Part shown: positions 40,720 through 63,591 of the stretch, piece after piece
How the letters are laid out: every line of letters begins with the position of its first letter
Numbering within the stretch: position 1 is the stretch's first letter
Source: Podarcis gaigeae
Lineage: Eukaryota
Length of the DNA stretch: 64,000 bases
Assembly: GCA_964106915.2 (NCBI GenBank)
Contig: OZ066921.1
Strand: one strand, 5' to 3'
Notes under the pieces: generated by a model
The model's input: only the letters and a program-made list of their open reading frames with translations
What the model was told of the DNA's origin: nothing
Database searches by the model: none
Made by a program: the position numbers and the translations under genes

Positions 40720-42480
40720 ATGTTCAAGCGGCGCGTTCTCACGCTCCAACGAAACGTCTCTACCATCTTTGCGGCTCCAGTGTGCTACTCGAGGCAGAAC
40801 CTTATATTTCTCTGGTTTGGGGGACGGTTGTTTGCCGGAGAGAGGGTGGAGAGAGATTCGCTGGCAGTCGTGCGGGCGGTTGCTGATCGCAAGGCGTCTC
40901 TCCCCGCCCCCGCCCCCCAAAAAGTCTTGGCCTCCGCGAACCGGAGTCAGCGGAGGGGCGCGCTGGAGGGAAGCAGGGCGCCGCTGCTCTTTGTCAAGGG
41001 ATTTGCGCTGCGACCTCCGCCCCAGGCGAAGGGGGAGACCCAGACAAGGCGGGGGAGGGGTTGTTTCTCCCCTTGAACCAGCAAGATTCCTTTTCTCCCC
41101 CGCGGACCAGGCTCAGCGCCCAGCCGCGTTTCCCGCTGCTGAGCGGCCGGGTCCTTGACTGGCGGGGCTGGATTTCCGCGCCTCGATCTGCCCGTGGCCG
41201 TTGGCTTCGCCGAGCCCGCTTGGGGCTCACTAAGGCCGCCCCCATCCTACCTCCTCCCCGCTCCGCCTCGCCTCGCCTGCTGGTCCCCGCCTCCTTCCTC
41301 CCTCCCCGCTCTCCCTCCCCGCCACTCGGCGCGTCCCCTCCCCTCGGAGTTGGCAGCTCGGTGGCCCAGCCGGAATCTCGCAGCCGTTGGCGCTGAGGGC
41401 CGGAGCTCTCCTGCCGGAGTTGGGCTTCCCGGGAGGGGGGCGGACTGCTGCTTGGTCTCGCCCCGCCGGCCCTCCTCCAAGGGCGAGCAAGAGGAGCGGC
41501 CTGCCAGCCAGCCAGCCAGCCGTCGCGCGCTCTGCATCCCTCCATCCGAGCGAGCCTCGCCGCGCAGCCTTTTGTTCCCCCGGCAAGAAGTTTGTGCGCT
41601 GAGAAGGGCCGTGACAGCTGCAGCCCCGTTAGGGAGCACAGAAGAGGGGGCGGCGGCGGCGGTTCCTGCTCCTGCTGCTCGCTTGACATGCAGCCCACGG
41701 CTCGGCTCGGCGGGGACGGCTGCCGGGGGAGGCGGGCCCCGCTCTTGCCGCCGCCGCCGCCGCGACGCACAAAAGGCTCCAACTAAACTTCCCTCCTGGA
41801 GAGCGAGCAAGCAAGCGGGGAGAGCTCCGTCTGCGCGGCCCGAGCATGGTAGGAACCGAGAGCCGCCCGGCGAGGACACCGGCAGCCGGCTGTCCCGGCC
41901 CGTCCCCTGCGGGGGCGCCTCTGCTTCTGTCCGCCGGCTGCCGCCGCCCTTGAGCGAGGGAGAAACGCCGAGCAGACTTCGCCACGAGATTCCCAGGCTG
42001 CACGGGGAGAGCTGCCCGCCTACCTTCCGGGGCCTTTGCTAGCGGTGCTGAACCACCTATCCCGTACGCCGGCCGAGGATGCTGGGCAGACTGGAGGCGC
42101 CCGACGTCGCCCGGCATGAAGAACTTCCTGCGCTGGGACCGCGAGGGATCTCCGCCGCCGGGCGCAGTCCGAGCCAGCCGCGCCGCGCGGAGGGGCCGAC
42201 GAAGCAGCCTCTGCAAAGCGCAGTTCTGCCCAGGCATGGAGGCGCGCGGGAGGCCGGGCCTTTGTTCCGCCAGGAGATCGCGCTCTGCGGCCGCCTTCCC
42301 GAGAGCTGGCCTTTTCCTCGCCGCCGCCGCTGCTGAGCTTCCGACCGGGGCGCCCTCTGGAAGAGGCTTTGTCGGAGCGGGCTGGAAGGCTTGCCTTAAG
42401 GAGAGCAGCCCTACCGAGCAACCGGAGGAGGCGGAGGGCTTGCAAATAGCGATCGGCAAAAACGGCTTTATGTGTTGGCC
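40720..42480 (+). promoter_or_regulatory. Intronic CpG island / internal promoter and 5' leader for the KIAA0754-type exon
   Basis: Abrupt rise in GC and CpG density against a CpG-depleted background; GC boxes (CCCCGCCCCCGCCCC at ~40901, several GGGGCG/GGCGGG) and CCG/GGC runs; lies directly upstream of the long ORF. Confidence 0.88.
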
Positions 42481-42782
42481 TTGGACTGCTAGCGTTTCCG
42501 CAGGAGCCATGGAATGCCTTGCCTCTTTCAAGGACTTCCACGGTGGAAGATGACTTCTCTCTGGAAAGCTCTGTAACTTCTGTGGAATACAAAATTGTGG
42601 CCTCCCAAGTGGTTATTAGGGATTTTCAAAAGACACCTTGCTCCACCATAATCTATTTCATTTTGCTTTGAATGGAGAGCTTGTGAGGCAGGGGAGGTTT
42701 TTTCTTGTTGTTGTGGGACTCTTCTCTGCGGGGTCCCCCCCCATTCTATTCTGTTCTGTTTTCTTTTATTGTTTTGAAAAGT

Positions 42783-45700
42783 ATGGGCAAGCCACTCAGC
42801 AGGCCTGACTGTTTAAGGCAGAGTCCTGCTTGCTTGGGGAAAGGAGAGGATGAGGATGGGTATATAGAAGACTGTTACGTCCCTCAGAGGTCCATCTACG
42901 ACACCATGAGGATAAATGAGCAGATTGATCAGGGGTCTAAGACTAGCCAGCCTTCCAAGAGTACCCTTGAAAAAGGGGATGGCAGCACAATTTCTAGCAA
43001 TGGAACTTTAGGGGCACCCAGTGTCTTTGAATCAAAGGCACCCGAGAGCAAAAAGTTAGACGAGAGGGTCATTTTTGATGCCTTGAAACTTAGTAGTGAT
43101 GTTTCCAAGTCAGCACCGGCACCCCCAAGGCGGCGGCCAAATCCAGAGAAGAAGGAGAATGTCAACAGGCGGTCATGGAAGTCCTTTATGCCACCCAATT
43201 TCCCTGAGTTTGCTGAGAGAATTGAGGCCTCCTTGAGTGAAGTCTCAGAAGCTGGAGTTTCTAACCCATCCTTGCAAGAGAAGCAGGAGTCCACTGCCAT
43301 GTTGGCAGAGAGCCCTAGGCAGTCCGACCAGGGGGAATGCATGTCAGAGCCGTTGACCCTGGAGCACATTCCCAAACTGTCTGGAGTTCCAGAAATTCAG
43401 GAAGTGAAGCAGCTAAGTGAAGCCTTCTGTGAGTTGTCTCAGGATGAGTGCCAGCCTCTTCTGGGACCAGAGGACATGGTAGTTGACCTGACCGGCGGCA
43501 GGCGGCGGGACCACAGGCTCTCGAGCGCCACGTGGCCAAGGGTGATGAAAAATGCCATCAGAGCAGGCCTTGGCAGTGGGCATCATGACACCTTGGAGGC
43601 AGACAACACAGACTGTGTCATAGAAACGGTGCCACTGTCTCCTTGCCTGAGTGAAGAGCTCCTGGACCCAGGAATGAGCATTCTCATCGCCCCCAACCTC
43701 CGGGAAAAGACTGAGTCGGAGCTGAGGTTTGAGGAGGATGAGCGATTGATCATGATGGAGGCTGGGGAGGAGTGGGAGGAAGGCTTGCTGTCAGGGAAGG
43801 CTGCTGAGAAAAGAAGTTGTTACTTGACAGATATTTCTGAAGAAAAGGAACAATTAAGTGTTCCAGCCGTGACAGTTATGGAAGCTGTAGAGAGTTTTGC
43901 TGGTGTCCAAGGGACCTCTAACCACCCATCTCACTGGCAAGAGCTGTGGGATGACTCACAGCTGCGAGCTGTCAACTCTGCTCCCGTTCCCCAGGAAACG
44001 CACCAAGACTTAAACGCTACTCTTGAGGAGGAGGAGGCTGATGCCTGCAATGCTGAAGCTGTAGCAGCCGAAGTGGAAGAGGAGGAATTTGTTTCTGGCC
44101 TAGAAGCCTGTGCCTTCTCTCTTGCCCCAGAGCAGTTCTCTGATACTGATTCTGTGCAGATGTTCCTTGAACTAGAAAAGCTTTGCATGCTCGAAGAAGG
44201 AGGGGATGGAGTGGCTCCAGGTGATCTGGAGGTGCAGGATGCTAATCAGTGTTCAGAAGGGCTGGACATGCAGAAGGACTTGGCAGGAGCCTCCCAGCCC
44301 TTGACTCACCTTGAAGTCAGCATGGCAGACTCTGCTGTGGTCTCAGATCTGGAGGACTTTGATGCCACATGTGGTTCTCAAGCAGTAAGTACAGCAGAAG
44401 CTACCCTTTCAGAGTGCTACTCTGAACGGGAAACTTCTGGTGACTCTGAAAAGGTGACGTCTTCCAGTCCTCCGCTTGAAAAAGATGCTGTATCCCAACA
44501 ATCACTCTCATCCTTAGTTAGTCAGATAGAGGAGTATGGGGCAGAACTGTTGGCAGGTCACGACCCTGCAGAAAGCCAGAGGGTCAAAGGATTGTTGGAC
44601 TTTGCCATGGGTGAACCTGTGGCTTCAGTTGATTTCCCTTGCTGTAGAGAACCACCTCCTTGCATCCATGTTCTTGCCATTGGCAGAGAAACTGAGCAGC
44701 AGCAAATGCAGCCTGTCATTTGCTATGAAGCAAAGGAGGTATCCCCGAGCCATGATGAACTTGCCACAACTGCTGAGGAGCTGGACTCCCAACCAGATTT
44801 TGACTTGGCAAAAGAGATGGTGAGTGCTATGGGGAAAGAGCTGCAGGCTTGCGATGAGCTCAACCCATCAGAAAGGACTGACTTCTCCAACTGGGATGTC
44901 CCAGAGCTGGTTTCTGAGGATGAAGTTGCAGAACTGGATAAAGAAAACCTCCTTTGTGGGGGCCACGTTAGTGACATAGAGGATGTAGATAGTTCCTTGG
45001 TGCCTTCACAAAGTGAGTTTGTATTGCGGGACTCTGAGGAGCCTCTAAAACGTGTAGGCTCCTCTGAGAACTTGAAGGCTGTGTGTCAACTTGAGCCTTT
45101 AACAAGGCTGCTGTGTGATGGAGAAGTGTCAGCGAGTGCAGCCCTTCTCCAGGAGGAAACGCCAGAGGTAGTTGAGCAGGGAGCAGCAGCAGCAGCCAAA
45201 GGCAGCCCAGTGGAAGAGAAGAGATATTGCTTGGAACCTGGAGACTTGGAGTTCCTTTTTGGGCAGAGCAGGGACAGTGAGATAACAAAGGATGAGGAAT
45301 GTAGTGCCAAGTTTGTGTGTACCAACTCACAAGCTTTTGTTGAAGATTTGTTTGCTGCACAGCCCAGTTCAGAAGACTTGGCTGCCTCTTTTGGAGAGGA
45401 ATCTGCTTCTGTCAGTCCCCTCCCTAGTGACAAGGCTCTTGATGCCCCTCCAGATAGCCCAGAGGAGCTTGCTGACCCCTTTCCTTCTGCTGGAGTGGGG
45501 CCTTCCATCACTGATGGTCCAGCAGCTGTAACATGTTCCACCCTGCCTTTGCCATCCTCACTTGCTTCTACCCCAGAAGCAGAAGGGCCTGTTGTGGATG
45601 CTGCCTGCTTATCCAGGTATAAAGAAGTTTGTGGTCAAGATTGTCTTCCAGGAGTCACTTCGGAGCCCAAAGCAGAGGACCTGATACCATTCTTACCAAA

Positions 45701-46142
45701 TGCAGAGGAGATGTCCTCTGCTTCTGTGCCATTCTCCTTGGAAAATATGCCTCTAAGTAGAAAGGAACAGCCTGCTCTGGAAGAGCTGGCCAATGCCACA
45801 ATGCCCACCTCCACCAAGGAGCCTGTTCAGGTGGCCCAAGCGATTAAAGGCCTTGCCATCTCTATGCCATTGGGTGCAGATGGTGTGCCAGAGCCACCAG
45901 AAGTTGGTTTCTCTCTGGCACCTGGAGCAGTGTGGGATACAGTCTGCAGCACACCACAGCTGCCCTCTTCTGCAGCACCTGAAAGTGAAGAGGAGCTGCT
46001 GACCTCTGCTGTGCCAGATTCAGAAAGTACCTCCTTTTCTTCCCTCGTTGCTGAAGGGCCTCCTGCTGAAACGGATGGATTGGTTCCAGATAATGAGGTA
46101 TTTGTTTCCCCTGGTCCCCACACGCTGCCGTATCAGACATAA
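42783..46142 (+). CDS. KIAA0754: KIAA0754-type nested intronless ORF (1,119 aa if unspliced) / alternative first coding exon of MACF1 (1,105 aa up to the donor at 46097)
   Basis: ATG in strong Kozak context (AGTATGG). N-terminus MGKPLSRPDCLRQSPACLGKGEDEDGYIEDCYVPQRSIYDTMRINEQID and blocks MPPNFPEFAERIEASLSEVSEAG, PLSPCLSEELLDP, LREKTESELRFEEDER and SDTDSVQMFLELEK match recalled human KIAA0754, which lies inside MACF1. Confidence 0.9.
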   Translation: MGKPLSRPDCLRQSPACLGKGEDEDGYIEDCYVPQRSIYDTMRINEQIDQGSKTSQPSKSTLEKGDGSTISSNGTLGAPSVFESKAPESKKLDERVIFDALKLSSDVSKSAPAPPRRRPNPEKKENVNRRSWKSFMPPNFPEFAERIEASLSEVSEAGVSNPSLQEKQESTAMLAESPRQSDQGECMSEPLTLEHIPKLSGVPEIQEVKQLSEAFCELSQDECQPLLGPEDMVVDLTGGRRRDHRLSSATWPRVMKNAIRAGLGSGHHDTLEADNTDCVIETVPLSPCLSEELLDPGMSILIAPNLREKTESELRFEEDERLIMMEAGEEWEEGLLSGKAAEKRSCYLTDISEEKEQLSVPAVTVMEAVESFAGVQGTSNHPSHWQELWDDSQLRAVNSAPVPQETHQDLNATLEEEEADACNAEAVAAEVEEEEFVSGLEACAFSLAPEQFSDTDSVQMFLELEKLCMLEEGGDGVAPGDLEVQDANQCSEGLDMQKDLAGASQPLTHLEVSMADSAVVSDLEDFDATCGSQAVSTAEATLSECYSERETSGDSEKVTSSSPPLEKDAVSQQSLSSLVSQIEEYGAELLAGHDPAESQRVKGLLDFAMGEPVASVDFPCCREPPPCIHVLAIGRETEQQQMQPVICYEAKEVSPSHDELATTAEELDSQPDFDLAKEMVSAMGKELQACDELNPSERTDFSNWDVPELVSEDEVAELDKENLLCGGHVSDIEDVDSSLVPSQSEFVLRDSEEPLKRVGSSENLKAVCQLEPLTRLLCDGEVSASAALLQEETPEVVEQGAAAAAKGSPVEEKRYCLEPGDLEFLFGQSRDSEITKDEECSAKFVCTNSQAFVEDLFAAQPSSEDLAASFGEESASVSPLPSDKALDAPPDSPEELADPFPSAGVGPSITDGPAAVTCSTLPLPSSLASTPEAEGPVVDAACLSRYKEVCGQDCLPGVTSEPKAEDLIPFLPNAEEMSSASVPFSLENMPLSRKEQPALEELANATMPTSTKEPVQVAQAIKGLAISMPLGADGVPEPPEVGFSLAPGAVWDTVCSTPQLPSSAAPESEEELLTSAVPDSESTSFSSLVAEGPPAETDGLVPDNEVFVSPGPHTLPYQT

Positions 46143-47189
46143 AATTACTTTTTTTGTAGGAAGGGAGTTGGGGAGGAAGCGAGGAGTTAATCCATAGTTG
46201 ACTGAGTGATGTAATTTGGAGTACAAAGCATGCCTGAGTTTTTCTCCCTTTTGTTAAAATTTGGGTTCTCCTTCCCTTTGAAAGGGGGTTACATTTTGTA
46301 GGCAGATTTAATGGTCTTGATAGAAACAGTGTTGGGTTGGTGGGCTTCTTTTTCTTTTCAGGTGTGGGGAGGGTTTCAAACAAGAACAAACCTGTCATTA
46401 TCTTGCTTACGTAAAAATATTCTTGCCACCACCAATGTCTTGAACTGACTTATTCAAGTAGCATTATGTTCATGCGCTTAGAAGCAAATTATACATTTTC
46501 TTCTGAAAGATTGTGATTAAGTGTGGGTAGCTGCAGAGCTCATAGATGGGAAAATGTGTTGCTAAGAGGGAAATAGTATAAGGCAAATTCCAGCTAACAA
46601 CATTACATAAATGATAAAAACCAACCAACTGCCTAGTCAAGGTTCTTTCAAATCCATAGAGAAGAAAAGAAGTTGCTGAAAACTTTTTATTTAAATCTCC
46701 AAGTAAAGAAGGGGTTTGGAAAAGAGAAGCTTTTGTGCCAAGTCTGTTTGCAGCACCAAACGTCTATAAAAGGGCATTGTTTTCTTTTGGATACTGATTT
46801 TGACAGTTGTCAACCAAGCTAAGCTAGTTTTTTGTACTTTTTAAACTGTCATGACGTTGGTTTTTCCCCCCTACCCCCCTGCCTAGGAACTTGGCTTGGT
46901 TGCAATTTCTCACGCTTCAGACAGTTGCACATTTGAAAAACAAGAAAAGCAGAAGTAGCCAGAGGCTTGAGAAGGGCTATGATGTAGTGTTCAATTCACA
47001 TGTGGAAAACAGTCTCCAACTGTGGGCAGAAGGCTGAGTTTTTCTCAGTGAAAAAATGCAGCACCCACAGCCAAGACTGTACAGTTCAGACCTGTAATTA
47101 GGAAGAAAGGTGGGGGGGCAGGGGATGCCAAGCTAAGCCAAACTGACATGAATTATCGCTCTGGGTTTATTACAGTCTGTCCAGCTGAG

Positions 47190-47225
47190 TCTGAGGAGAG
47201 AGAGCTATCTGAGGAGAGAGAGCTA
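47190..47225. repeat. 18-bp tandem duplication
   Basis: TCTGAGGAGAGAGAGCTA x2. Confidence 0.9.
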
Positions 47226-47906
47226 TTTGATAGAAAACATTATCAGTCCTATGGTGCCCAGAGTGGGAGATATTTGCTCAACACCCCAGGGTCAAAACAG
47301 CCAGGGAAGTATATGGAAGGTGCTCTTAGCTGTTGCCACGGTTGGTTCTACAGGGGAGAAGAGAAGCTATGAGGGGTTATGGGGCATTTCACACATTGCC
47401 AAACTGTTGTGCTGCTAGGTATGAGATAGGATCTCCCACTTTTTAATATGGTGCAAAGCAGCTGTGAGCCCCCAAACTGGATGGTTGGAACTGCACTAGG
47501 GAGAGAGTGTTTAGTTGCTGCCACTTACTCGACCATCTCTTGTTTTCCTGATCTAATCCTCCATTCTCACTTTAGCTGTGTGATGATGGGGGAACGAGCA
47601 AGCACATTAGGCAAGAAGCCATGACTTCTCCTGGCTTTCTGATTGGTGTGTCTGCATGATACATTTATTGCAAGTGTGTGTGTGTTGCATTTGCACTTGG
47701 ATAAAATATAAACCAGCTGTTAGGTAGGAGAAAGAGGTCAGCAAGTTTACCATAAAGAATGGGAACAGGATACTAGAAAAGAGTCTTGAGAGAAGCATCT
47801 TGTAAATGAAAGCCTGGTAGCATCATTAGGAGGGCAGGGAAGCAGAGAATAACAAACAGATGAATTCTGTTTATTTTCTGGGTAATTCTGCAGGACTTGC
47901 TTCCAA

Positions 47907-48128
47907 ATTCATTCATTCATTCATTCATTACATTTATATCCCACCTTTCTCCAGGAAGCTCAGTATGGCCTACAAGCTTCTCCCCATTTCTTAATCACAA
48001 CAACCCTGTGAGGTGGGTTAGACTGAGAGTGAGTGGCTGGCCCAAGACCACACCCAGTGAGCATCATGGCTGAGTGGGGATTTGAAGCCTGATTTCCCAG
48101 CACTCTAACCACTACACCACACTGACTC
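47907..48128 (-). mobile_element. Older CORE-type tRNA-SINE with (CATT)n tail
   Basis: Reverse complement starts GAGTCAGTGTGGTGTAGTGGTTAGAGTG, homologous to the 4532 element. Confidence 0.75.
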
Positions 48129-48790
48129 CTGTGAATAGGAACACGGACTGGCATTCTCCACCCCAAACACACGCACATTTAGTTTCTCTATTGGGCTAAC
48201 CCAAATGTCACAAAATGGTACAGAAGCTTTTAAGTTCGCCAAAACTTTTCATTGGTCTAGGTGGGAAGAAGGTACTTTTGTCAAGCCATCCATTTCTGCA
48301 TCTGGTAAGAGTCTTAAGATGAAGAGTGGGAAGAGGTAGACCCCCCTTTTCTCCCCTCACATATTTACTGTCTAAAAATGGCCCTTCCTAGTGTAGCATC
48401 ATCCAGATTTTTTGAACTACAGTTTGGTTGTGCTGACGGGCTGACGGGAGTTGTAGGACAGTGTGTCTTGAAGGTGCCATGGTGGGGAAGGCTGGTGTGA
48501 GGAAAAAGGCCGCATGCTGGCCCTCCTATTGCAAGGCAGTTAGTGTCTGTCCTCCCTTTTCTTTTGCCCTCCAGTCTTTCCTCCTCCTGCTGCTTTTGCT
48601 TCTCTGAATCAGGGAAAGGTTTGCGCCTTTGTCCAAGTGAGAGCTAGCCAGCCAGCGCTCTGGCATCCTCTCCGCGTTCTGTATTTGAAGCTCTAAGCTA
48701 TGCTTCCAAGTATTTTCTGCCGAGGCGGTTGTTAAGGCTGGGTTTTGCGTTTTTAAGCCTCCCCCACTAAACCTGTCTCTGGTTTCTGGA

Positions 48791-48902
48791 TCATTCCCAC
48801 CCAAATATGGCAGCTGTTCCTGATTGTGGGTGGGGGTGGGGATTTTGCTTGAACAGAGCGAAATGCTTTGGAGTCCTCTCCTGTGTTCGTTTTAAAAATA
48901 AA
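48791..48902 (+). promoter_or_regulatory. Candidate muscle-type enhancer (CArG + E-box + GT box + MEF2)
   Basis: CCAAATATGG 48801-48810, CAGCTG 48811-48816, GGGTGGGGGTGGGG ~48828-48841, TTAAAAATAA 48892-48901, CATTCC 48792-48797. Confidence 0.55.
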
Positions 48903-48989
48903 TTTTGTATTTGAGGTTATGGCCGGAGCGTGTAGGAAGAGGTGGCGGCATGTCCCTTCAGAGAGCTTGCATGCCTGGCTTATCGGTCT

Positions 48990-48990
<1 letters not shown>

Positions 48991-49034
<44 letters not shown>
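48991..49034. repeat. (GT)n microsatellite
   Basis: Direct reading. Confidence 0.95.
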
Positions 49035-49035
<1 letters not shown>

Positions 49036-50936
49036 TGGCTGCTGTTGCATGTAGGAGGGCCCTTTCCATTTATATCTATCTATAAAATATATAATATAAA
49101 ATAAGCAGTCCCAGCAGAAGGGCTGGGTGAGTCGTTTGCTGTTATGTTGCCATCAATCCTTCTTATGGCAGAATGGCTCTATAGCTCTGGACAGCATCTT
49201 CATTTAATATCCTGGCATGTTCCCATTTCTGGAGACAAGTTGCTGAACGTTGCAAGGAAGGAAAACATTTCCCCCTGACTTTTTCAAGCTTAGATTCTTG
49301 CTGCCTTGCATCACAGCTGTCTCGCTCAGGGCCCTCCGTAAACCATAGGGAAGTTTGGGCACAGTTTTGTTTGGAAGTGGCTGCTAAATCTTTAGCTGGC
49401 TGCAAAGCTTTAGAAATGTGTTGCTGTTCCTAATTTTCTTATGAACAGAGCAATTTGTTGCTTCAGTTTGGTGGTTTTTGCTGCTGATTTACTTTTCATG
49501 TGCCACTTTCCCCTGGGAGCAAAGGGCTCCTTAAAGATCACCAAAAACTACCTCGCCAGGTGTTTTGGACTACAACTCCCATCATCCCTCACCATTGTCT
49601 ATGTTGGCAGGAGTGGGAGTCCAGAGCACCTGGGGAGGCTGTGAATGAGTATGAGCGTGCTTTTTCTTTCTCCCACTCCTGCTGCTGACATTTATCATGA
49701 CACCCCTATGAGGTAGGGCAAACTGACAAATAGTGGTGATTCAGGGCTATTGGATGAATAAGAGACTTCGTCCTGGGAGTCTTGTGTTCTAGCAATTACT
49801 CAGCAGCTTAAAAAAACCCCCAGCAACCAGGTACTAAGAAATTGCGGGGGGGGGAGGGGCATGTTGCGTAATGCACTGCTTGAAATTTGAATATTTTTTC
49901 AGCTCTGGACCTTAATACATTCGGTCATGGTTAAATGCCCTATGGGATTTAATCACGCATCAGTTTTTTTTATTATAAAACAAAAGTCTGTAGTTTGAAG
50001 TAATTGTGTTTAAATGCCACAGCAGATGAATTCTACCACTTACACCTGCACAAATCATGCATTTTAATATGATATTTACAGAATTGCTGTGTGTTGACTT
50101 GATCTTTTGGAAAGGCACCTGATAAATCTTGTTAATAAAAAAAAGGGTTCTCCCAATGAAGCATGAGAAAGAGGCTCTTCTGGGTGGTGTATCTTGGCAA
50201 GATCCCAGCAAGACAAAGCTCTCTGTTATAACTGAACCAGTGTCTGTAGCTTTCGAGTAACACAAAACTGCTTGCCTAGACCAGATGTGCGGAACTTCAA
50301 GTTGTTGCTGAAATACAACAACTCCCACCATCCTTGGTCTTCAGCCATGCTTTCTGGAGCTGATGGGAGTTGCAGTTTGGCAACATCTGGAGGGCGAAAG
50401 GTTCCTTGCACCTGGTCTCAGTGATATGCCAATAGATGTTGGCCCAATAAGAAGAAGCATTAAAGACAACTTTTTGTTTTAAAATGGAGGTCCAAAGGAA
50501 GACTGCCAGGATGTAGGAAGATGCCTAATCTTAAGTCAGACTATTGGTCCATATAGCCCAGGAGTATCTACACAACTGGCAGCAGGTCTCTAGGGATTCC
50601 TTCCCACCCCTACTTGGATACAGTGAATGTATTTATTCTGTCTTCTGTCCCAAGCAGAAAACATTTGCTGCCTCCGAAGTAAGGTGTGCACAGAACTGTC
50701 TCTTGCAGTGCATGATGGCAGCCTTCGTGCACAGAGTAAGAACCAGTCCAGGGGCTGCATGCAGCTGGTGTGGCTCGAAGGGCATGGTGGGATGGGAGGC
50801 TCTTCTGCCCTTTTTCTCGCCTCCTTCTGAGGAGAGGAGTTTGCTCAAGGGCAGCTACCCTTTGAGTGTCACTCTCAGTGTGGCCTCTGACCACTTCGGG
50901 TGCTCTTCACGCAGCTGTCTTGCAGGGCAGTGGGGA

Positions 50937-50938
<2 letters not shown>

Positions 50939-50985
<47 letters not shown>

Positions 50986-51040
50986 TTATACCCTACCCAT
51001 CCAGTAGGGTTTCCCAGCCACTCTGGGCAGCTCCCAACAG
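50939..51040 (-). repeat. (AAT)n microsatellite adjoining a short retroelement 3' tail
   Basis: ~14 AAT units followed by TTTATACCC...CCAGCCACTCTGGGCAGCTCCCAACA. Confidence 0.75.
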
Positions 51041-51171
51041 ATTAAATGCAATGCCTCTTCCTTTAATTTGCCACCCTGGGCAACTGCCCTGTTTTCCTCC
51101 TGTAAATACAGTGTGCCCGGAGATGCTGGGGATTGAATCTAGGAGCTTCTGCATGCAAAGCAGTTAATTAT

Positions 51172-51380
51172 AAGAAGAGCCTTGATAGGCCAGAGGAACT
51201 GACTAATCCAGCATCCTGTTCTCCTGCTGGCCAGCAAGATGGGAAGCCTGGACCTGAATGCAGCCATGGAGGCAGAGCATAGCCATTGTCGCTAATTGCC
51301 ATTGATAGCCTTCTCCTCTGTGAATTTGTCTAATATTTTTAAAGCCATCTAGGTTGGTGACTATTCCTGCATCTTGTGAT
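51172..51380 (-). mobile_element. CR1 LINE 3' fragment
   Basis: Reverse-complement homology to 35417-35738 (CCATTGATAGCC...GAATTTGTCTAAT...TTTAAAGCCATCTAGGTTGGTG). Confidence 0.65.
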
Positions 51381-53871
51381 AGGTGCTCTTCCATGCAGCT
51401 ACAGCCCTTCCCATAAGTTGAATCAATGTAAGCTGAAGGAGAAGGGACTGTGTGCATTTTAAAAGGAAGTTCTGGAAGAGAAAGGGCAGCAAGAGGAGCG
51501 GGAGGCAGCTGGGAAGAGAATGAGGTGCTAGACCAATCAAACAGGAATGATATGGTCAGGTGTGGGGGAGGGGAAGGCGCTGGAATGACAGTTGATGTTT
51601 CTCCAGGACAGCATCAAACCTTCAGGTGTTTATTGACTCACATAACTCCTTTGTGTTCATTAAATAAAAAAATAGTAAATCCAGCCCTCTATAAAGAACT
51701 TTGAAGATCACAGTGAAAATTTTTGCGCCAGACATGGAAGTGAGGCAGAAGGGATTGAGATGCAGGTTTAGTAAACTCATCCTTTGCTCTGTCCCTACAA
51801 AAAGGAAGTTGCAGCATAAAGTATATCCTCCTTAATTTCCATCTGCCAGCTTGGCTTTGGGCCTCTGCTGTTTAGCAACCATCCAGGGCAAGCAGTCCTA
51901 TGTCATCTGCCACTATGGCTGCTGTTGATGGTTCCTTGGAGTTTGCCCAGCTCTGTGTGAAGCAGGCCACTGTTCTTCCCATTCCACAGGGAGGGAACCA
52001 AGTGACATGAAAGAGCAACATGCCATGCGCTCTATCGTGGTATATTATCAGAACTCCCAGAAACACACAGGGCTTGTCGTCGTCACTGAGATCAGTTTAC
52101 ATGTGCAGCTGGGAGTCAACAAGCTGAGAATCAGGCAGTCCAAAACATATCTAAACTGGTCCTTAGTGGGCTAAGGGTCTCTTTCCAGGGATGCTTTAGC
52201 CAGACAGTGAGCAGTTTGGATGAGCCTTTTGTGTAGGAATTTGTGTTAATATGAATCTCTTGATTCCAGCCATTGGATTCTTCCCTACCTGTGATCATAT
52301 GTATTCTGGGAGTTGCAGAGGTTTGGCGTTTCACGTGCCCACATGGCTAAATGGCCTCTTCTGCTGTAGTGTTCCCAAGTGAAGGAGCTACCTGCCTTCC
52401 CCTTTTTCTTAATTCCTCCTCTGCTACCATTTCCCCTTCACAGGAGCCTCCCTTTCCTGGGAAGGAGAAATGGCAGCTCTTTGTCAGAGTCTTGTCTGTC
52501 ATCAGGTACTTTTCAGAAGATCCAGGGCTCCCTGATAGGAACAGCCTTCTCCTGATTTTATCTCACACTTTCTTCCCTCCCTTTATTTCTAAACCTTGCT
52601 TTGCCTTATGGAGCTTTTTATTTCTCACAAGGTCGTGGGAAGATCTTGGAGATTGAGCAATTGCACTCATCTTTCTTTTGTCTTTTTGAGTGATAATGCA
52701 GCAAACTTTCCGTATGTTTATGATACCTTGTGCATGTGGAAGGCAGTGTATAGGAAGCAGTTGTGCAGCTGGTGTGAACATGCTGTGGAATGTGGTGCTC
52801 TCTCCAGCGGTGTTGAGAGAAGGAGGTGGATAAATTTTTCTCCAAGAGAGAGAGTGAATTATGCCTGTCAACCTTACAGAGGAGTGTGGGTGTGTAGCTA
52901 ATCTGGCTTTTCTGGTGCAGGAGGTGGTGGTGGAGAGAGATGTAGCTGCTGGCCACTTTGCCTTCTAGGGCCACATGTTGTGTTTCAGTACAGCCTCATT
53001 TGTTGCCATGACTTTTCCTCCAAGCTCTAAATGCAACAGAGCTAACACTTTTCTTGTCTATCAGGTTGGCTGGCTGGTTTTTACAGAGATACCCTTTATA
53101 GCTCAGCTGCATTTTCTTTCTTTTTGCTTGCGTTTAAAACCTTTTTCCAGAAGTGAAACAAAACTCCAGATTCCTCTCTGCAAATACCTTTATATTCTCA
53201 GCTCAAGATACTGATAGCCAATTAGTAAGCTAGTCCATTCTCATTAACTTGCTATGTCTGCAAGCTTCATTCATGGGTTGGTGTGATCTGTAAATGAAGT
53301 CTGGCATTCATATGTAGGAGATGCTCTCAGCCACAGCTGGAGACAGAATGAAATGGTTAGCCAGTAGCCTCCAGGGATTGCCCTAAGGCAGCCTTCATCA
53401 ACTGGGTGTGCTCCAGATATTTTGTACTGCAACTTGCATCAGCTCAGCCAGCACTGCCAATATTCAGGAATGATGGGAATTGTTGTCGAAAGGTCTTGGG
53501 GATACAAGGCAGGCCGAGGTTGCCCGAAAGTACTGAGCAACTTCTTGCCAGTCTGGTGTTAGATTTAGATCAATGTTGTGTGCTGACAGAGACCTGGATT
53601 CAAATCCCTCCATAGCCTTGATGTTCACTGACAGCCAGTCATCTTGACCTTGGGACAGTAAGAATCTCCACTAATGCATCATCTATCTCACAAGTTTGTT
53701 GTTAGGATAAAATTGAAGTGGGGCTAACCATGTACAGTATGCTGCCCTGAGTTCCCGGCCTGATAAAACTATAGCAAATAAGAAGGCTAAGTAAGACAAC
53801 TGATGATTTGTGATGGAGGTTGACATCCTTTGTCTCTCCCTCCCCCATCCCCCGCTTCCATGTTTCCTCAG

Positions 53872-54033
53872 ACATTCCAGAAGGAGCAAGTTGACCCCCT
53901 TCAGGCAAAACTGCAGCAAGTCAATGGGCTCGGACAGGGACTCATCCAGAGTGCGGGAAAGAATTGTGACGTCCAGGGCTTGGAACATGACATGGAGGAC
54001 ATCAACACCCGCTGGAACACCCTCAACAAGAAG
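53872..54033 (+). CDS. MACF1: MACF1 coding exon ([26 protein letters not shown]...WNTLNKK), phase 0/0
   Basis: Acceptor ttcctcAG|ACA, donor AAG|GTGAGC. Confidence 0.95.
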
Positions 54034-54771: not shown

Positions 54772-54942
54772 GTGGCACAGAGGATTGCACAGCTGCAGGA
54801 AGCCCTGTTGCATTGTGGGAAGTTCCAGGATGCCTTGGAGCCTTTGCTCAGCTGGTTGGCCGACACGGAGGAGCTCATCTCCAACCAGAAGCCACCATCT
54901 GCTGAATATAAAGTAGTGAAGGCTCAGATTCAGGAGCAAAAG
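54772..54942 (+). CDS. MACF1: MACF1 coding exon ([18 protein letters not shown]...AQIQEQK), phase 0/0
   Basis: Acceptor atgtAG|GTG, donor AAG|GTGAGG. Confidence 0.95.
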
Positions 54943-55461
54943 GTGAGGAGTTGGTGGCCGGGGGACCTTGAATTCACAGAGCACAGCTGGCTGGCAGGAC
55001 CCACCATGGCCTCTCTCTGCTTTGGGCACTCAGCTCCACCAGCAGCCCCAGGTACCCCCAGTTGACAGGAAAGGTTTCACTTGCTTTCCTTTTGGCAGAC
55101 AGCTTCTACCTACCACCTGTGCCATGTCAAATAAGCAGGAGAAGGAAGGAAAGAGGTTGGTAGTTGGTGAGCTTTGGAGAACAGAGAGGGGACAATATAG
55201 GGGACAGACACCCAACCTTTAGTGTGGAGACAGCCCCCACTAGGAATGGCATAAAAGGCAGCCTTTGTTGGGTGAGTTCTGGGAACTTGAAGTTGATGGT
55301 GGTGAGTGAAAGGGGAGAAAGAGGGCACAGTTAAAAGTGGTAGGAGGGAAATGTGAGTTTAGCAGAGGGAGAACCCTGGGGACCTTTGGCCTTACTGAAA
55401 GCAGAAGGGTAATTCCTTCCTTAGCAGAATAATTATCACTTTCTAATTCTTTATTCCAAAG

Positions 55462-55628
55462 TTGCTCCAGCGTCTCCTGGATGACCGGAAAGCTACTGTC
55501 GAGATGATCCAAGCAGAGGGTGGGAGAATAGCTCAGTCTGCTGAACCAGCAGACAGGGAGAAGATAGTTGCCCAACTGGAGAGCCTTGGAAGCCACTGGG
55601 CAGGACTTCTCAGCAAAGCTACAGCCAG
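55462..55628 (+). CDS. MACF1: MACF1 coding exon ([21 protein letters not shown]...LLSKATA), phase 0/2
   Basis: Acceptor ttccaaAG|TTG, donor CAG|GTAAGC; translated by hand. Confidence 0.93.
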
Positions 55629-55664
55629 GTAAGCTACAAGGCCTGTAGGATGCAAGCTTGTCTG

Positions 55665-55731
55665 TTGTAATTTAGCACTGAAGCGAGAGAAAGTAACCTT
55701 GTAATTTAGCACTGAAGCGAGAGAAAGTAAC
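55665..55731. repeat. 34-bp tandem duplication
   Basis: TTGTAATTTAGCACTGAAGCGAGAGAAAGTAAC(C) x2. Confidence 0.95.
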
Positions 55732-55766
55732 TCTCCCTGCAAAGTATACTTTGATGTTCTTTTGGT

Positions 55767-55950
55767 AAGCTGCCTTATACTGAGTCGGACCATTGGTCCA
55801 TCTAGCTCAGCACAGGCTACTCTGATTGGCAGCAGCTCTCCAGGGTTTCAGGCAGGGAGCCTTTCCCAGCCCTACCTGGAGATGCTGCTGGGAGCTGGAC
55901 CCCTTGGGGCTTCTGCATGCACAGCAGATACTCTGCCATTGAGCTGTGGT
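55767..55950 (-). mobile_element. tRNA-Ala-derived SINE
   Basis: AAGCTGCCTTATACTGAGTCGGACCATTGGTCCATCTAGCTCAG...CAGCCCTACCTGGAGATGC...CTTCTGCATGC. Confidence 0.7.
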
Positions 55951-57355
55951 CCTTTGCTCTGGTAACCCTGCTGTTTCATAACACAAGTTATTTTATAAAC
56001 TGTGACTACCTGTGCAATGCACACAATAACTTTGCAAAACAAGCTGTTAAAGATGCCGTCTCATGCCTGTGCTCTGAATGAAATCACTCTGAACTTCTGA
56101 GCCATATGGCTAGGACATTGCAACTGAGTGTGGTTAGCAGGACTGAAGAATACAAACTGTGTCTGTAGGATGGGATGCACTACTTGCAGGAGAGTCTCTT
56201 GCTTGTAAAACTCACAAAAACCCCCTCTTGATCCTGTGAGTCCCAGAGCACCATGAGCAGCACATGTGGAACATGCTTCTGTGCCACACTATTTCTTTCT
56301 TCTTTAAAATATTTATCATCTGCCCTTCACTCGAAGGTGCCAAGATAGAAATATGTGCAGTATAAACTAAAACCAAACTATAAGATTAAATCAGCATAAA
56401 ACAAAAATACAGAATTCAGATACCAATAAAACCAGCAGTGGTAGCAGGTAACCTTTGGCCATCCAGGGCCAGTCCAGGATGTTTTAATGTCTGTGGAGGG
56501 CAGTCCTCAAGACCTCTCTTGCAGATGTAAGAAAAAGGGGAAGGTCCCCTTTCAATGAATGGTAGCTGTGCAAGAACAGATAACAGCTGTGGTTCACTTC
56601 AGAGGAGGCAGTCAGTGCAGGAGAACTTTATGTTAGTGGATTTTGACCTGTGCATCAGCTCTGTGTTACTCTCTGCTGCCCTTTAGCTTACCCCCAAGCT
56701 GCTACCTCACCCTCCTACTTGGGGTTGGGATGGAGTGTTTCTTCCAAACTCAGTTTATATTGGCACACCTGTGGGCTCATCATTACACATGACTGCATGC
56801 ATACCGCTTTCCCACATATGTGAAGCAACCCACAGACCAAAAAAAAGGTCTAAGGAACCATGTTCTGGGTATAAAGAGCTGTAGGTTCCCTCCCTCTGTC
56901 CCTAGAAGTTTCTGCTTTGCTTTGGGGGGGGGGGCTGTGTGTGCGTGAGAGAGAAGCTTTTCTGCACAGCTCTGGAATTAGATGGAAGTGTAAAATCCAA
57001 GGAAAGGGTTATCATTAATATTTTTTTAAACCTGGCAGTTGCATTCCAGCAACTCCACAGAGAATCAAGTGCAACATCTGTGAAAATGGCCTATATCAGC
57101 AATTTCTTCAAGCTGTATGTCTCTCCCCCCCCCCACCCCGCCTTGGCTTTCCCACATTTCCTAGACAGGTTTCATTCACATGGAGAAGGGGGAACCCCAC
57201 TCCTCCTTAGCCCCACCATGTCTAAACATGAGATTTCAGATCATCAAATCTTTTGCATGGGGCTACAAAAATTACCAATATTTTCACTGAACCCACAATT
57301 CCCTTCTTGCTCAATCATCACCAATTTAGGCGACATCAGTGTATATGTCATTAAG

Positions 57356-57512
57356 NNNNNNNNNNNNNNNNNNNNNNNNNNNNNNNNNNNNNNNNNNNNN
57401 NNNNNNNNNNNNNNNNNNNNNNNNNNNNNNNNNNNNNNNNNNNNNNNNNNNNNNNNNNNNNNNNNNNNNNNNNNNNNNNNNNNNNNNNNNNNNNNNNNNN
57501 NNNNNNNNNNNN
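57356..57512. other. Assembly gap (N run) adjoining the CR1 fragment
   Basis: Ns. Confidence 1.
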
Positions 57513-57950
57513 TTTATTCATATATTCATTGAACTGCATTTCTCCTCTTGTTACCCCCTGCCCTGTTTTGGAGACATCCTTTTGGAGCTCTTCACAGCCC
57601 ACTTGGTTGTTCATCATACTGAATACTTTGGTGTCATCCACAAACTTTGTCAGCTCCCTTCTCACTCCTGTCTCCAGACCATTCCTGAACAAGTTCAGGG
57701 GCACCATCGGCTTCAATGCACAGATCCTTCAGGAACTTTACTGCATGCTTCCTTCCTTCCATTGTGAGAACTGTCTGTTTATTCCCACACTCTGTTTCCT
57801 GTTCTTTAAGCAGCTGCTGATCCTTAAGAGGATCTGTCCTTTCACCCTGTGACTGCTGAGTTTATTCAGAAGTGTTTGGGGAGAGGGACCTTGTTAAAAA
57901 CTTTTAGGAAGCTCAACTATTCAGTGTCTGCCAGACTACATGTTTCAGCA
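57513..57950 (-). mobile_element. CR1 reverse-transcriptase fragment (decayed)
   Basis: Minus ORF LNLFRNGLETGVRRELTKFVDDTKVF...GCEELQKDVSK...MQFN resembles CR1 RT LFNIFINDL...KFADDTKL...LQKDL. Confidence 0.8.
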
Positions 57951-58077
57951 ATCTTATTGGCACTCCAAATCTTATTGGCACTCTCGAACTCCAAAAGGTT
58001 GATGAGGCAGGCTCTTGATACATTAATCCTGTCTTCAAAAAAGGGGGGTGGAGTTAATGACCCTGGAGGCTCTTGCC

Positions 58078-58172
58078 CATCCTTTGCCAAGATGATGCCC
58101 TCCAGATGTTGGCTGGGGCTGATGGGAGTAGTAGTCCAAAACATCTGGAGGGCATCATCTTGGCGAAGGCTG
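58078..58172. mobile_element. Palindromic MITE copy with perfect 25-bp arms
   Basis: GCCAAGATGATGCCCTCCAGATGTT (58086-58110) and its exact reverse complement (58140-58164). Confidence 0.8.
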
Positions 58173-58385
58173 TTCCAGCCAGTCCTGGAAGTCTCTTAAA
58201 ATGCTTTCTAGCAGAATCCCTGGTGCAAAAGCTGAACCTGGTTATCTGCTCAACTTTCTCATGATAAATACTCTGGGTGCTCATTTCATTCTTTGTTATT
58301 GCAGCAATGGCAAAGTAGCCTCATCTTCTTCCTCGTCCCCCCCCCCCCCATTGTTGCTGATGGATTTGTTTTTTTCTTGCCACAG

Positions 58386-58545
58386 GCAAAACCAGCTGGA
58401 GGAGATCCTGGTTTTGGCCAAGCAGTTCCACGAGACATCAGAGCCCATCTCTGACTGGCTTTCGGTGACTGAGAAGAAACTGGCCAACTCAGAGCCCATT
58501 GGGACTCAGACGGCCAAAATCCAGCAGCAGATAAGCCGGCATAAG
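58386..58545 (+). CDS. MACF1: MACF1 coding exon ([17 protein letters not shown]...QQQISRHK), phase 2/0
   Basis: Acceptor ccacAG|G, donor AAG|GTGGGC. Confidence 0.94.
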
Positions 58546-59638
58546 GTGGGCAAAGGGTTGCCAAGGAATTGTGAAATGTGGGGGTGACGGGGGAGCACTG
58601 TGTGGTAGGCACTTCAGTAAGAATAGCTGCTGCTGTGGAACCTAGGTACCTGAATAAGATTTGGGGGCGGGGGGAGGTTGGAAACATGCATGTCATAATG
58701 GAACAATCCTTAAGCCAAGTTGAGTTGGTTGGAATTCAGAATGAAGAGTCTCATGGTTTGTATCCAAGCAAAATGTTGAGCCTCAGAACATGCAGGACAA
58801 GACTGCCAATGACTACTACCCGTGATGACTTATGTTCTGCTTTCACTGTCAGACATAGTATACCTCTGAATAGCAGATGTGGGAATCAGAGACAGGTAGA
58901 ACGCCGATACACTTGGGTCCTGCTTGCAGACTTCCTATAGGCATTCGTTTGGCCAGTATAAGAGCAGGATACTGGGCTATTGGACTGATCCGGCAGCAGG
59001 GTTGTTCTTAGGTTTTTAACTTTAGTAGTTCCTAGCATATTTCCCATATCACTAAATCCTAGAATCCTGCACTTGGTGCAATCCTAGATGGGTCTGCTTG
59101 GAATAAGGTCCATTGGGTTTAGTGGGACATACTCCCAGCTAATTGTGCATAGGATTGCAGCCTTAGCGTGTTTGAACACTTGAGTGTTGTCACGTCAGCT
59201 CAGCCAATCGCAAGAAGGAATCATTGTTGGTGTCAATCAGGGGTCTCTGGGTAGGAAGAATCCTGGCTCATTAGAAGGGAATTGTGTGGGAGATACACCC
59301 CACCACACACACCTTTTCCCAAATTCAGTAACTTTTCCTCTTTAAGCTATGAAAATAGCAGCCACAGCTATAACTCCTGTTCATGAGATTACCTGGCCTC
59401 CGGAGAAGAATGAAACAAAACTCCCATCTCTCACTTTTCTTTATTTAAACAATTTATTTCATATATGTTATTGCCCTCATGGGTGGATATTTTTACTTTG
59501 AGTTTGCATGATCATCAGACACGCTCATTTCTCAGTTTTGTTTTAGATTTGTTTCCCGTTTATTCCATTTTCAGTCATAAGTTTCTGTCTGCTTGTTTTG
59601 TGTTCCCCCTTCTCTTAAACCATCTCATGGATCTCCAG

Positions 59639-59965
59639 GCCCTCGATGAGGAGATAGAGAGTCATGGCTCAGCTGTGGCTCTGGCAGTCAACACTGGACA
59701 GTCCCTGGCCTCCTTGAGCTGTCAGGCTGAGCAGGCCTCGCTGGCTGAGAAGCTTGACCTGCTTGAGTCCCGGTATGCAGAGGTTTGCGACCGGTGCGGC
59801 CGGAAGGCTGCCCTTCTTGACCAGGCCTTGTCCAACGCCCGGCTCTTTGGGGAGGACGAGGTGGAGGTGCTCAACTGGCTGGCTGAGGTTGAGGACAAGC
59901 TCAGCTCAGTGGCCGTCAAGGATTACAAGCGGGACATCCTGCAGAGGCAGCATGCTGACCACCTG
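59639..59965 (+). CDS. MACF1: MACF1 327-nt symmetric exon (ALDEEIESHG...RQHADHL), phase 0/0
   Basis: Acceptor tctccAG|GCC, donor CTG|GTACTG; 109 aa, about one spectrin-repeat length. Confidence 0.92.
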
Positions 59966-59976
59966 GTACTGACTCC

Positions 59977-59995
59977 TTTTCCCATCTTTCATGAT

Positions 59996-60049
<54 letters not shown>

Positions 60050-60072
60050 TTTCCCATCTTCCATGATGTATT
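59977..60072. repeat. (ATT)n tract enclosed by a 24-bp direct repeat
   Basis: TTTTCCCATCTT(T/C)CATGATGTATT at 59977-60000 and 60049-60072. Confidence 0.9.
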
Positions 60073-60712
60073 CTTATTCTTCTTATCTTTTCCTTTGTTT
60101 CTCTTGCTTTGAGTCTTTTGATTTTGATCTGGGCCATTAATATCTCCCTAGAACACCAGCCCCACCCTTGCTGCTGCCCCATACAGCCACCACACAAACC
60201 GGCGTTATTGCTGTGCCAAAGTGGAAAAAAGAGAGAGAATGATGACCAACCCTTGTCCCAGTTAAGCCTTTTAGAAGGTTGCCACCCTCTACTTAAAGCA
60301 GCCCTTCCCAAAGGCATAGGTTTTTGACTACAGCTCCCATCAGCCCCATGATCCTGGGGTTGATGGGGTTTGTAGTCCAGAACATTTGGACTTGGTTAGG
60401 AAAGGCTGGTGTAAGTATTCCTCCTAGCTTGATGCAGTGGTGGTCTGCCTAGGACTCTCCCTCCTCTTCTGTTTGGTAGAAATAGTGAGCATCATCAATG
60501 CCCTGCCTTCCTTAGGCTTCAGGCTGCTTCTGTGTCCCCTCCCAGGGGCTTCCTGTGTGGAAGGGAGCCACAGGTGTCTCTTGGGTGCCGCCTTTACTCT
60601 GTCAATGGGCTGGTGTTGTCTGAGCCCCAGTGGGGGAAACTTGTTTTGGTCAAAGAGGAGCCTCTCCAGGGGAACTTGCCTTTGACACAAGGTTTTTTCC
60701 CCACCTGCCTAG

Positions 60713-60797
60713 GCCTTGAATGATGAGATTGTGAACCGCAAGAAGAATGTAGACCAGGCCATTAAGAACGGGCAGGCCCTTCTGAAGCAAACCACAG
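60713..60797 (+). CDS. MACF1: MACF1 coding exon (ALNDEIVNRKKNVDQAIKNGQALLKQTT), phase 0/1
   Basis: Acceptor gcctAG|GCC, donor CAG|GTAAGG; translated by hand. Confidence 0.94.
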
Positions 60798-61234
60798 GTA
60801 AGGCTAACCAACCTATTGCACTCCCCACAATCCTTCCTGTCATTCTTCATTGACTTCTCTGTGCCAATGGCTGCAGAACATAGTACTTCCCCCCTCAAAA
60901 AGATTCACCCACTTCATTTCTTATTTTCTTATAAAGGGTTGCTTCAGGCAAACAGGAGTGGGGTTGAAAGCAGGGGCTTTAAATCCCAAGTATTTGCTGC
61001 TTTTTGCTTAGGAAGGCTTGTCATTTTCTAGAACATTAAGTATAGAAATTGTTTTATTGTTTTTAGCTTATTGAGTCTATAACATGTGGGGAGTTAATCT
61101 TATTTTATTCTACTTCGGTAGCTTTTGTTTGAGAAGTAGTTTCTAAGCCTGCAGATAAAGAGGCAAAACAAAAGAAGTCTCTAAACCAGATGACTAGAGT
61201 TTGCTGCAGCTAAACACTTGGTGGCTCCCTGCAG

Positions 61235-61476
61235 GGGAAGAAGTGCTGCTCATCCAGGAGAAGCTGGACGGCATCAAGACCCGCTACTCGGATATCACCA
61301 CAGCCAGCTCAAAGGCTCTCCGCACTCTGGAGCAGGCCCGCCAGCTGGCCACCAAGTTCCAGTCCACGCACGAGGAGCTGACAGACTGGATGGGTCTGGT
61401 GGAAGAGGAGCTGACGTCGGGTGGAGGGCACTCTCCTGTCGGGGAGCAGATCCCTCAGTTCCAGCAGAGGCAGAAG
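61235..61476 (+). CDS. MACF1: MACF1 coding exon (EEVLLIQEKLDGIKTRY...QFQQRQK), phase 1/0
   Basis: Acceptor cctgcAG|GG, donor AAG|GTCAGG. Confidence 0.94.
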
Positions 61477-62224: not shown

Positions 62225-62431
62225 GAACTGAAGAAGGAGGTCATGGAGCACAGGCTTATCCTGGATACTGTGAACGAAGTCAGCCGTGCCCTCCTGGAGC
62301 TGGTGCCCTGGCGTGCCCGCGAAGGGCTGGATAAGTTGGTTTCGGATACTAATGAGCGCTACAAGATGATCAGTGACACCATCAAGCAAAGGGTGGAAGA
62401 AATAGATGCTGCTATACAGAGGTCCCAGCAG
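62225..62431 (+). CDS. MACF1: MACF1 coding exon ([20 protein letters not shown]...AAIQRSQQ), phase 0/0
   Basis: Acceptor tttccAG|GAA, donor CAG|GTAGAG. Confidence 0.94.
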
Positions 62432-63471: not shown

Positions 63472-63591
63472 TATGAGCAGGCAGCTGATTCAGAGCTTGC
63501 CTGGGTTGCTGAGACGAAACGGAAGCTGATGGCACTTGGCCCAATTCGCCTGGAGCAAGACCAGACTACAGCCCAGCTTCAGGTCCAAAAG
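63472..63591 (+). CDS. MACF1: MACF1 coding exon ([19 protein letters not shown]...QLQVQK), phase 0/0
   Basis: Acceptor ggacAG|TAT, donor AAG|GTGCGG. Confidence 0.94.

What the first reader, a model, noticed from the sequence alone, without database searches (positions are those of the whole stretch)
42783..54033. Nested KIAA0754-type ORF is wired as a giant alternative first exon, predicting an actin-binding-less short MACF1
Seen: a 3.36-kb stop-free ORF in the 33-kb intron, same strand as MACF1, behind its own CpG island. After codon 1105 (…LVPDNE) there is a donor GAG|GTATTT (46097/46098) at phase 0, and the next MACF1 acceptor (53872, ACA TTC CAG) is also phase 0, so splicing gives …[18 protein letters not shown]… in frame. 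Known: MACF1 has N-terminal CH and plakin domains and C-terminal EF-hand, GAR and EB-binding regions. Inference: this isoform drops the CH/plakin domains and the first part of the rod, replacing them with a 1,105-aa acidic head while keeping the microtubule-binding end. The mammalian ORF is known by name, and I recall it being linked to MACF1 in annotation, so the novelty is the function of the isoform and its conservation into squamates rather than the ORF itself.
Basis: partly seen in the sequence, partly recalled or inferred. Interest (0 to 1): 0.88.

Follow-up and report, generated by a model that had tools for sequence, protein, structure and literature searches.

The report
Short actin-free MACF1 isoform, ancient start
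This lizard intron holds a real second start for the giant cytoskeletal gene MACF1, giving a half-length protein without the actin-binding end; databases already list it, but its function seems unstudied, and its very conserved front end suggests a lipid anchor that ties microtubules to membranes.

Summary
Confirmed. The 1,119-codon ORF (42783-46142) lies behind the window's only CpG island, inside a 33.2-kb MACF1 intron. An RNA-type contig from a close relative (about 98% alike) runs 42422-46097 and continues into the exon at 53872, so the predicted junction exists. The donor is conserved in snakes, skink and birds; spliced models exist from fish to wombat.

It is not new: databases name the orthologues 'MACF1 isoforms 6/7' (KIAA0754), and a 2017 review legend probably mentions the exon. 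Two additions: dystonin (DST) has a paralogous first exon in the same intron, and hagfish has one, so the arrangement probably predates the MACF1/DST split. Only about 150 N-terminal residues are shared, with Met-Gly-Lys-Pro-Leu-Ser, Cys10 and Cys17 invariant. Best reading: a 3,400-residue linker whose lipid-anchored, disordered head replaces the actin-binding end, tying microtubules to membranes. The lipid anchor is inferred only; two myristoylation datasets did not list it.

The scan's first readers also noted the lipid motif here and the DST exon on another piece of this genome.

The parts
40751..42750 (.). CpG island, inferred internal promoter of the short isoform
   Evidence: only CpG island in the window; islands at the same place in skink, boa, potoo; small RNA-type contigs at 41548-41738 and 42329-42479; exact start site not mapped
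42329..42782 (+). 5' untranslated part of the first exon (lower bound; several upstream ATGs lie in the island)
   Evidence: contigs colinear from 42329/42422 into the ORF with no 5' loose end; in-frame stop ends at 42686; upstream ATGs listed
42783..46097 (+). coding part of the alternative first exon (KIAA0754-type head, 1,105 codons)
42783..42833 (+). N-terminal Gly2-Lys3-x-x-Ser6 with Cys10 and Cys17; candidate myristoylation and palmitoylation signal
   Evidence: invariant in 25 sequences from hagfish to mammals, both paralogues; many synonymous changes under it; modification not shown
42783..43232 (+). conserved core, residues 1-150, shared with the DST head; short predicted helices at 38-49 and 94-104
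   Evidence: 53% identity over 162 aa to alligator-lizard DST head; profile; AlphaFold mean pLDDT 53.7, no globular fold
43629..43781 (+). second conserved block, residues 283-333, MACF1 only (fish to mammals)
44133..44180 (+). third conserved block, about residues 451-466 (coelacanth and amniotes)
46095..46103 (+). phase-0 splice donor GAG|GTATTT
   Evidence: conserved; used in RNA of a sister taxon
46098..46142 (+). 14-codon read-through tail and stop of the unspliced ORF (equivalent of mouse isoform 7)
   Evidence: tail length and sequence not conserved; no RNA depth at 46119-46700 in four runs
48650..49270 (+). conserved non-coding block with AATAAA at 48897-48902; possible 3' end of an unspliced transcript
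   Evidence: 73-77% identity to skink and boa; the hexamer is AATAAG in both; use not tested
53872..54033 (+). shared MACF1 rod exon that accepts both the upstream exon and the nested exon; starts inside a spectrin repeat
   Evidence: (Pfam spectrin positions 47-94 of 105)
19135..20649 (+). last full-length MACF1 exon before the host intron (5' edge approximate)
54772..63609 (+). following rod exons kept in the short isoform (about 54772-54945, 55459-55629, 58384-58545, 59636-59974, 60713-60802, 61234-61476, 62222-62437, 63469 onwards)
   Evidence: tblastn with turkey, catfish and hagfish models; edges approximate

Best explanation
A CpG-island promoter in the middle of MACF1 starts a transcript whose first exon carries a 1,105-codon head and splices in frame to the rod exon at 53872 (shown). 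The product is about 3,370 residues: a disordered acidic head, a partial spectrin repeat, about 16 or more rod repeats, EF-hands, GAR and SxIP, with no CH or plakin domain (inferred from orthologous models; the 3' end lies outside the window). DST has the same arrangement with a head of about 430 residues, and the arrangement probably predates the MACF1/DST duplication (shown as homology and shared intron position; the order of events is inferred). Most likely the head begins with a lipid anchor (myristate on Gly2, possibly Lys3, palmitate on Cys10/Cys17) followed by short binding motifs, and the long acidic stretch is a spacer, so the isoform links microtubules to a membrane instead of to actin (inferred). 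With no actin-binding domain it should also lack the head-to-tail autoinhibition described for Drosophila Shot (inferred).
For: Junction: contig covers 42422-46097 and its 28-nt loose end matches the start of exon 53872 at 26 of 28 letters, both differences synonymous; no depth past the donor. Donor conserved as phase-0 E|V or equivalent across amniotes, coelacanth ends at the same motif. Spliced head+rod+EF+GAR models without CH or plakin hits from fish to wombat. DST twin in the same intron with phase-0 donor; intron-free 9-10 kb contigs encode the whole short DST, one rodent-type sequence on 81 contigs. Head and rod trees both split MACF1 from DST. M1-S6, P8, C10, C17 invariant with 6-10 of 15-16 identical residues on different codons. 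Gly2-Lys3 starts can be myristoylated on both residues, as in ARF6 and TMEM106B (PMC12268641); dystonin lead sequences with lipid motifs are known (10.1101/122010).
Against: No lipid evidence: the protein was not found in the supplements of two myristoylation proteomics papers (one file cut, cell-type and database limits apply). The whole first 50 residues are conserved, so Gly2 invariance is not specific to lipidation. Lys at position 3 breaks the classical PROSITE pattern and the effect of Pro4 is unknown (own knowledge). The junction rests on one contig from one run of a sister taxon; raw reads were too sparse to show it. No protein-level evidence. Hagfish is a long branch and the trees are midpoint-rooted, so its place is unsure.
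Confidence: 0.58

Rival explanations
1. The short isoform is real, but the head works only through protein-binding motifs (the tyrosine-containing block at residues 30-49, helix 94-104, the RRSW block near 130) and is not lipid-modified.
For: These blocks are as conserved as the first ten residues; helix 38-49 is the best-predicted part; no myristoylation hit.
Against: The start position itself is fixed: 307 records begin with the same six residues and no N-terminal insertions; two invariant cysteines follow in a basic stretch (4 K/R, 1 D/E in the first 20). The two readings are not exclusive.
Confidence: 0.3
2. The main product is the unspliced single-exon protein (KIAA0754, mouse isoform 7), ended by intronic polyadenylation; the splice is minor.
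For: Curated mouse record of the 1,115-aa form; weak donor; conserved non-coding sequence after the stop and around AATAAA 48897.
Against: No RNA depth beyond the donor in four runs while the exon is covered; tails after the donor vary freely in length and sequence; the hexamer is not conserved. Depth was low, so a tissue-specific unspliced form is not excluded.
Confidence: 0.08
3. The exon is an internal cassette spliced into full-length MACF1, not a first exon.
For: A pyrimidine-rich stretch ending in AG lies just before the ATG in squamates; one pigeon dystonin prediction has the head internally (P0422).
Against: That AG would join out of frame with the phase-0 upstream donor; it is absent in DST heads; the RNA contig runs through it unspliced; short-DST contigs have in-frame stops upstream of the ATG; CpG island upstream.
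Confidence: 0.04

Closest known systems
MACF1 isoforms 6/7 (formerly KIAA0754) in UniProt/RefSeq
   Same: Direct orthologue: same N-terminus, same intron, same donor; snake, bird, frog, fish and wombat models carry the same junction.
   Different: Lizard copy; the middle and end of the head are lineage-specific. That isoform 6 is the spliced long form is inferred from the naming; only isoform 7 (mouse, 1,115 aa, unspliced) was seen by name.
Short dystonin (DST) isoform with the paralogous nested first exon
   Same: Same intron, phase-0 donor, shared first 150 residues, rod and tail of about 2,260 aa.
   Different: Head about 430 aa instead of about 1,100; lacks the MACF1 blocks at 283-333 and 451-466.
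'Additional exon conserved between dystonin and MACF1' (Voelzmann et al. 2017, 10.1101/122010, Fig. 1 legend item 3)
   Same: Described as possibly its own isoform or an alternative start site; Fig. S1 lists NM_001167918.1 under mouse MACF1, which I recall as the mouse KIAA0754 mRNA.
   Different: One sentence in a legend, no function or motif; the figure could not be viewed, so the identification is probable, not shown.
MACF1-4, MACF1c and type-3 N-termini of dystonin
   Same: Spectraplakin isoforms without a full actin-binding domain (PMC8012552); a snake dystonin model starts with a Gly/Cys lipid-type motif (P0432).
   Different: According to that review all known MACF1 isoforms keep the plakin domain; this one drops it and part of the rod.
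Short dystrophins from internal promoters (Dp260, Dp140, Dp116, Dp71; own knowledge)
   Same: Internal promoters in a giant spectrin-family gene give C-terminal isoforms without the actin-binding domain.
   Different: Their unique first exons encode only a few residues; here the first exon adds over 1,100.

Membership tests
MACF1 isoform 6/7 (KIAA0754) orthologue | Protein homology of the head | tested here: met
   E=0 to 1e-138 over reptiles, birds, mammals; head tree groups it with MACF1
MACF1 isoform 6/7 (KIAA0754) orthologue | Nested, same strand, in the mid-rod intron of MACF1 | tested here: met
Alternative first exon | In-frame splice to the next host exon in RNA | tested here: met
   one contig of a sister taxon, 28-nt loose end
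Alternative first exon | Own promoter and mapped start site | tested here: inconclusive
   conserved CpG island and unspliced 5' coverage; no 5'-end data
Spectraplakin (full definition) | CH and plakin domains | tested here: not met
   no such Pfam hits in orthologous short models; it is a truncated isoform of a spectraplakin gene
Spectraplakin (full definition) | Spectrin rod, EF-hands, GAR, SxIP | tested here: met
   in orthologous models; only the first rod exons lie in this window
N-myristoylated proteins | Gly2 with small residue at 6 | tested here: met
   G2 and S6 invariant
N-myristoylated proteins | Classical pattern: no charged residue at position 3 | tested here: not met
   Lys3; known exceptions ARF6 and TMEM106B
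N-myristoylated proteins | Myristate shown on the protein | not testable with these tools
   not listed in two datasets checked; absence is weak evidence

The most novel reading that the evidence does not exclude
Vertebrates have kept, since before the MACF1/DST duplication, a separate class of half-spectraplakins made from an internal promoter, in which a lipid-anchored N-terminus (myristate on Gly2, perhaps Lys3, plus palmitate) replaces the actin-binding and plakin domains. These would be membrane-to-microtubule linkers, missing from the field's isoform lists and untouched by mutations in the 5' half of either gene.
Probability: 0.5. Interest if true: 0.62.

Novelty: already known. Interest (0 to 1): 0.38.

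Why it matters
The isoform is in databases but not in the six-isoform lists of recent MACF1 papers, and no functional study turned up in ten literature searches of the held library. If it is an abundant lipid-anchored linker, then knockouts, gene traps and patient variants upstream of this intron spare it, while GAR, EF-hand and late-rod variants also hit it. That bears on why MACF1 and DST phenotypes depend on variant position (inference). It also gives a cheap test: a 60-residue reporter with G2A, K3R and Cys mutants.

Tried and rejected
No Pfam family for the head; no solved relative for the head profile; ESM Atlas gave only low scores or nothing; the AlphaFold model was too poor for a fold search. 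Rfam found nothing in the window. No paper held the N-terminal peptide; papers naming both KIAA0754 and MACF1 were genetic-association or expression studies by title and abstract. No contig on record for the hagfish and coelacanth proteins, so their gene structure rests on database models. No invertebrate relative was recognised among 51 phmmer hits (a few weak hits were not identified); a profile search was not possible under the cap. Read piles at 41500-41763 are foreign GC-rich sequence matching a short repeat and were rejected. One search was an empty call with no result. Two human records appeared in hit lists (P0072, P0256); they were not opened, compared or searched further and were left out of all scripts. 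The N-terminal count includes unnamed records whose species I did not check.

Full report
Observation. The ORF runs from ATG 42783 to the stop ending at 46142, 1,119 codons. The donor GAG|GTATTT follows codon 1105 in phase 0, and the exon at 53872-54033 opens in phase 0. The previous MACF1 exon ends at 20649 in phase 0, so the host intron is 33,222 nt, and no rod exon hides in it. The only CpG island of the window covers about 40750-42750. Two N runs were left alone.

Is the splice real? By a rough matrix the donor is weak, seventh of 177 GT sites in the ORF, so sequence alone would not settle it. Two tests do. First, the donor and its surroundings are nearly identical in skink, boa and potoo, each with a CpG island upstream; boa and potoo show the matching acceptor 6.8 and 3.1 kb downstream. 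Single-exon predictions from reptiles, birds and mammals keep a Glu-Val at this point and then diverge freely. Second, a contig from run X2, an organism about 98% alike, covers 42422-46097 and goes on with 28 letters that match the start of exon 53872 at 26 positions, both differences synonymous. None of four runs has depth at 46119-46700. Raw reads over the exon are sparse, on the sense strand, and do not themselves span the junction. The junction therefore rests on one contig plus conservation.

What it is. The closest proteins are named 'uncharacterized protein KIAA0754 homolog' or 'MACF1, isoforms 6/7'; the mouse 1,115-aa protein is 'Isoform 7' of that entry. Models with head, rod, EF-hands and GAR exist for catfish, eel, frog, garter snake, rattlesnake, birds and wombat, with the same junction. 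They have about 2,260 residues after the junction, 16 Pfam spectrin stretches, an SxIP motif and no CH or plakin hit. The lizard form should be about 3,370 residues. The junction falls inside a spectrin repeat, so the rod starts with a partial repeat.

The wide search returned a second family with the same N-terminus but heads of about 430 residues. In alligator lizard and whale shark it sits inside a giant spectraplakin gene, before the exon homologous to 53872, with a phase-0 donor; in the lizard the upstream exon also matches. Spliced versions are named dystonin, and trees of head and rod both separate the two groups. Intron-free contigs of 9-10 kb encode the whole short dystonin; one rodent-type sequence is on 81 contigs, and none of the 15 members of its cluster carries a database name. 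A hagfish model has the head joined to the same rod position. The simplest reading is one internal first exon older than the MACF1/DST duplication; hagfish is a long branch and the trees are unrooted, so its exact place is open.

The head. Conservation is confined to residues 1-150 across both paralogues, with MACF1-only blocks at 283-333 and 451-466; the rest changes fast. In 25 sequences M1, G2, K3, P4, L5, S6, P8, C10 and C17 are invariant, as is most of the tyrosine-containing block at 30-48. Many identical residues sit on different codons, so selection acts on the protein. AlphaFold predicts no fold, only short helices; Pfam, PDB and the Atlas give nothing.

Mechanism. Shown: promoter-like island, first exon, in-frame splice, domain loss in orthologous models. 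Inferred: translation, and a lipid anchor. Gly2 with Ser6 and nearby cysteines is the usual layout of doubly acylated N-termini (own knowledge). Lys3 breaks the classical pattern, but Gly2-Lys3 starts are myristoylated on both residues in ARF6 and TMEM106B (PMC12268641). Against this, two myristoylation datasets did not list the protein, and the conservation could serve a binding motif instead. I put the membrane-to-microtubule linker at 0.58, a lipid-free adaptor head at 0.30, a mainly unspliced product at 0.08 and an internal cassette at 0.04. Autoinhibition in Shot needs the actin-binding domain (10.1101/122010), so the short form may be constitutively open; that is inference. The lipid idea was my reading before I consulted the scan's notes, which repeat it and are not independent support.

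Prior knowledge. [quoted passage not shown] A 2021 review and a 2026 paper list six MACF1 isoforms without it. The library lacks most subscription papers, so a functional study may have been missed.

Limits. Human records seen in hit lists were not used. The MACF1 3' end lies outside the window.

Verdict. Real and correctly read, already annotated, apparently unstudied. Novelty: already known. Interest 0.38, carried by the ancient twin arrangement in MACF1 and DST and by a directly testable lipid-anchor hypothesis.

Noticed in passing
L001:10001-11302 and L002:10001-11209: Paralogous nested first exon in dystonin of alligator lizard and whale shark, same intron and phase; whale shark has a CpG island about 1.5 kb upstream, alligator lizard none by the same test.
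   Followed up: yes
L003, L004, L005 (whole contigs): Intron-free contigs encoding a full short dystonin of 2,636-2,690 aa; the rodent-type cluster has no named member among 15, so it may be poorly annotated in protein databases.
   Followed up: partly
window 41688-42686: Ten upstream ATGs in the CpG island and 5' leader, several ending at one stop (42553); possible translational control.
   Followed up: no
window 42750-42782: Pyrimidine-rich stretch ending in AAAG just before the ATG, kept in skink and boa but not in potoo; looks like an acceptor for a 5' leader intron, not used in the one contig seen.
   Followed up: partly
window 46143-47100 and 48650-49270: Non-coding sequence conserved with skink and boa (66-77%); AATAAA at 48897 is AATAAG in both.
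   Followed up: partly
window 34414-34805, 35861-36030, 37269-37389, 37910-38560: Intronic blocks conserved with skink or boa upstream of the CpG island; candidate enhancers.
   Followed up: no
window 42876-42902: Residues 32-40 hold two invariant tyrosines in YxPQ and SIYDT(M/V) contexts that resemble SH2-binding motifs (own knowledge, untested).
   Followed up: no
window 53872-54033: The short isoform starts its rod with a spectrin repeat lacking its first helix, in both MACF1 and DST; it could be unfolded or pair with a helix from another chain.
   Followed up: no
proteins P0150, P0152, P0155, P0157, P0162: A divergent copy of the head (P0152 from a teleost) with an altered cysteine pattern, possibly from a teleost duplicate of macf1.
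   Followed up: no
window 55665-55731: Perfect 34-nt tandem duplication just after the exon ending near 55629.
   Followed up: no
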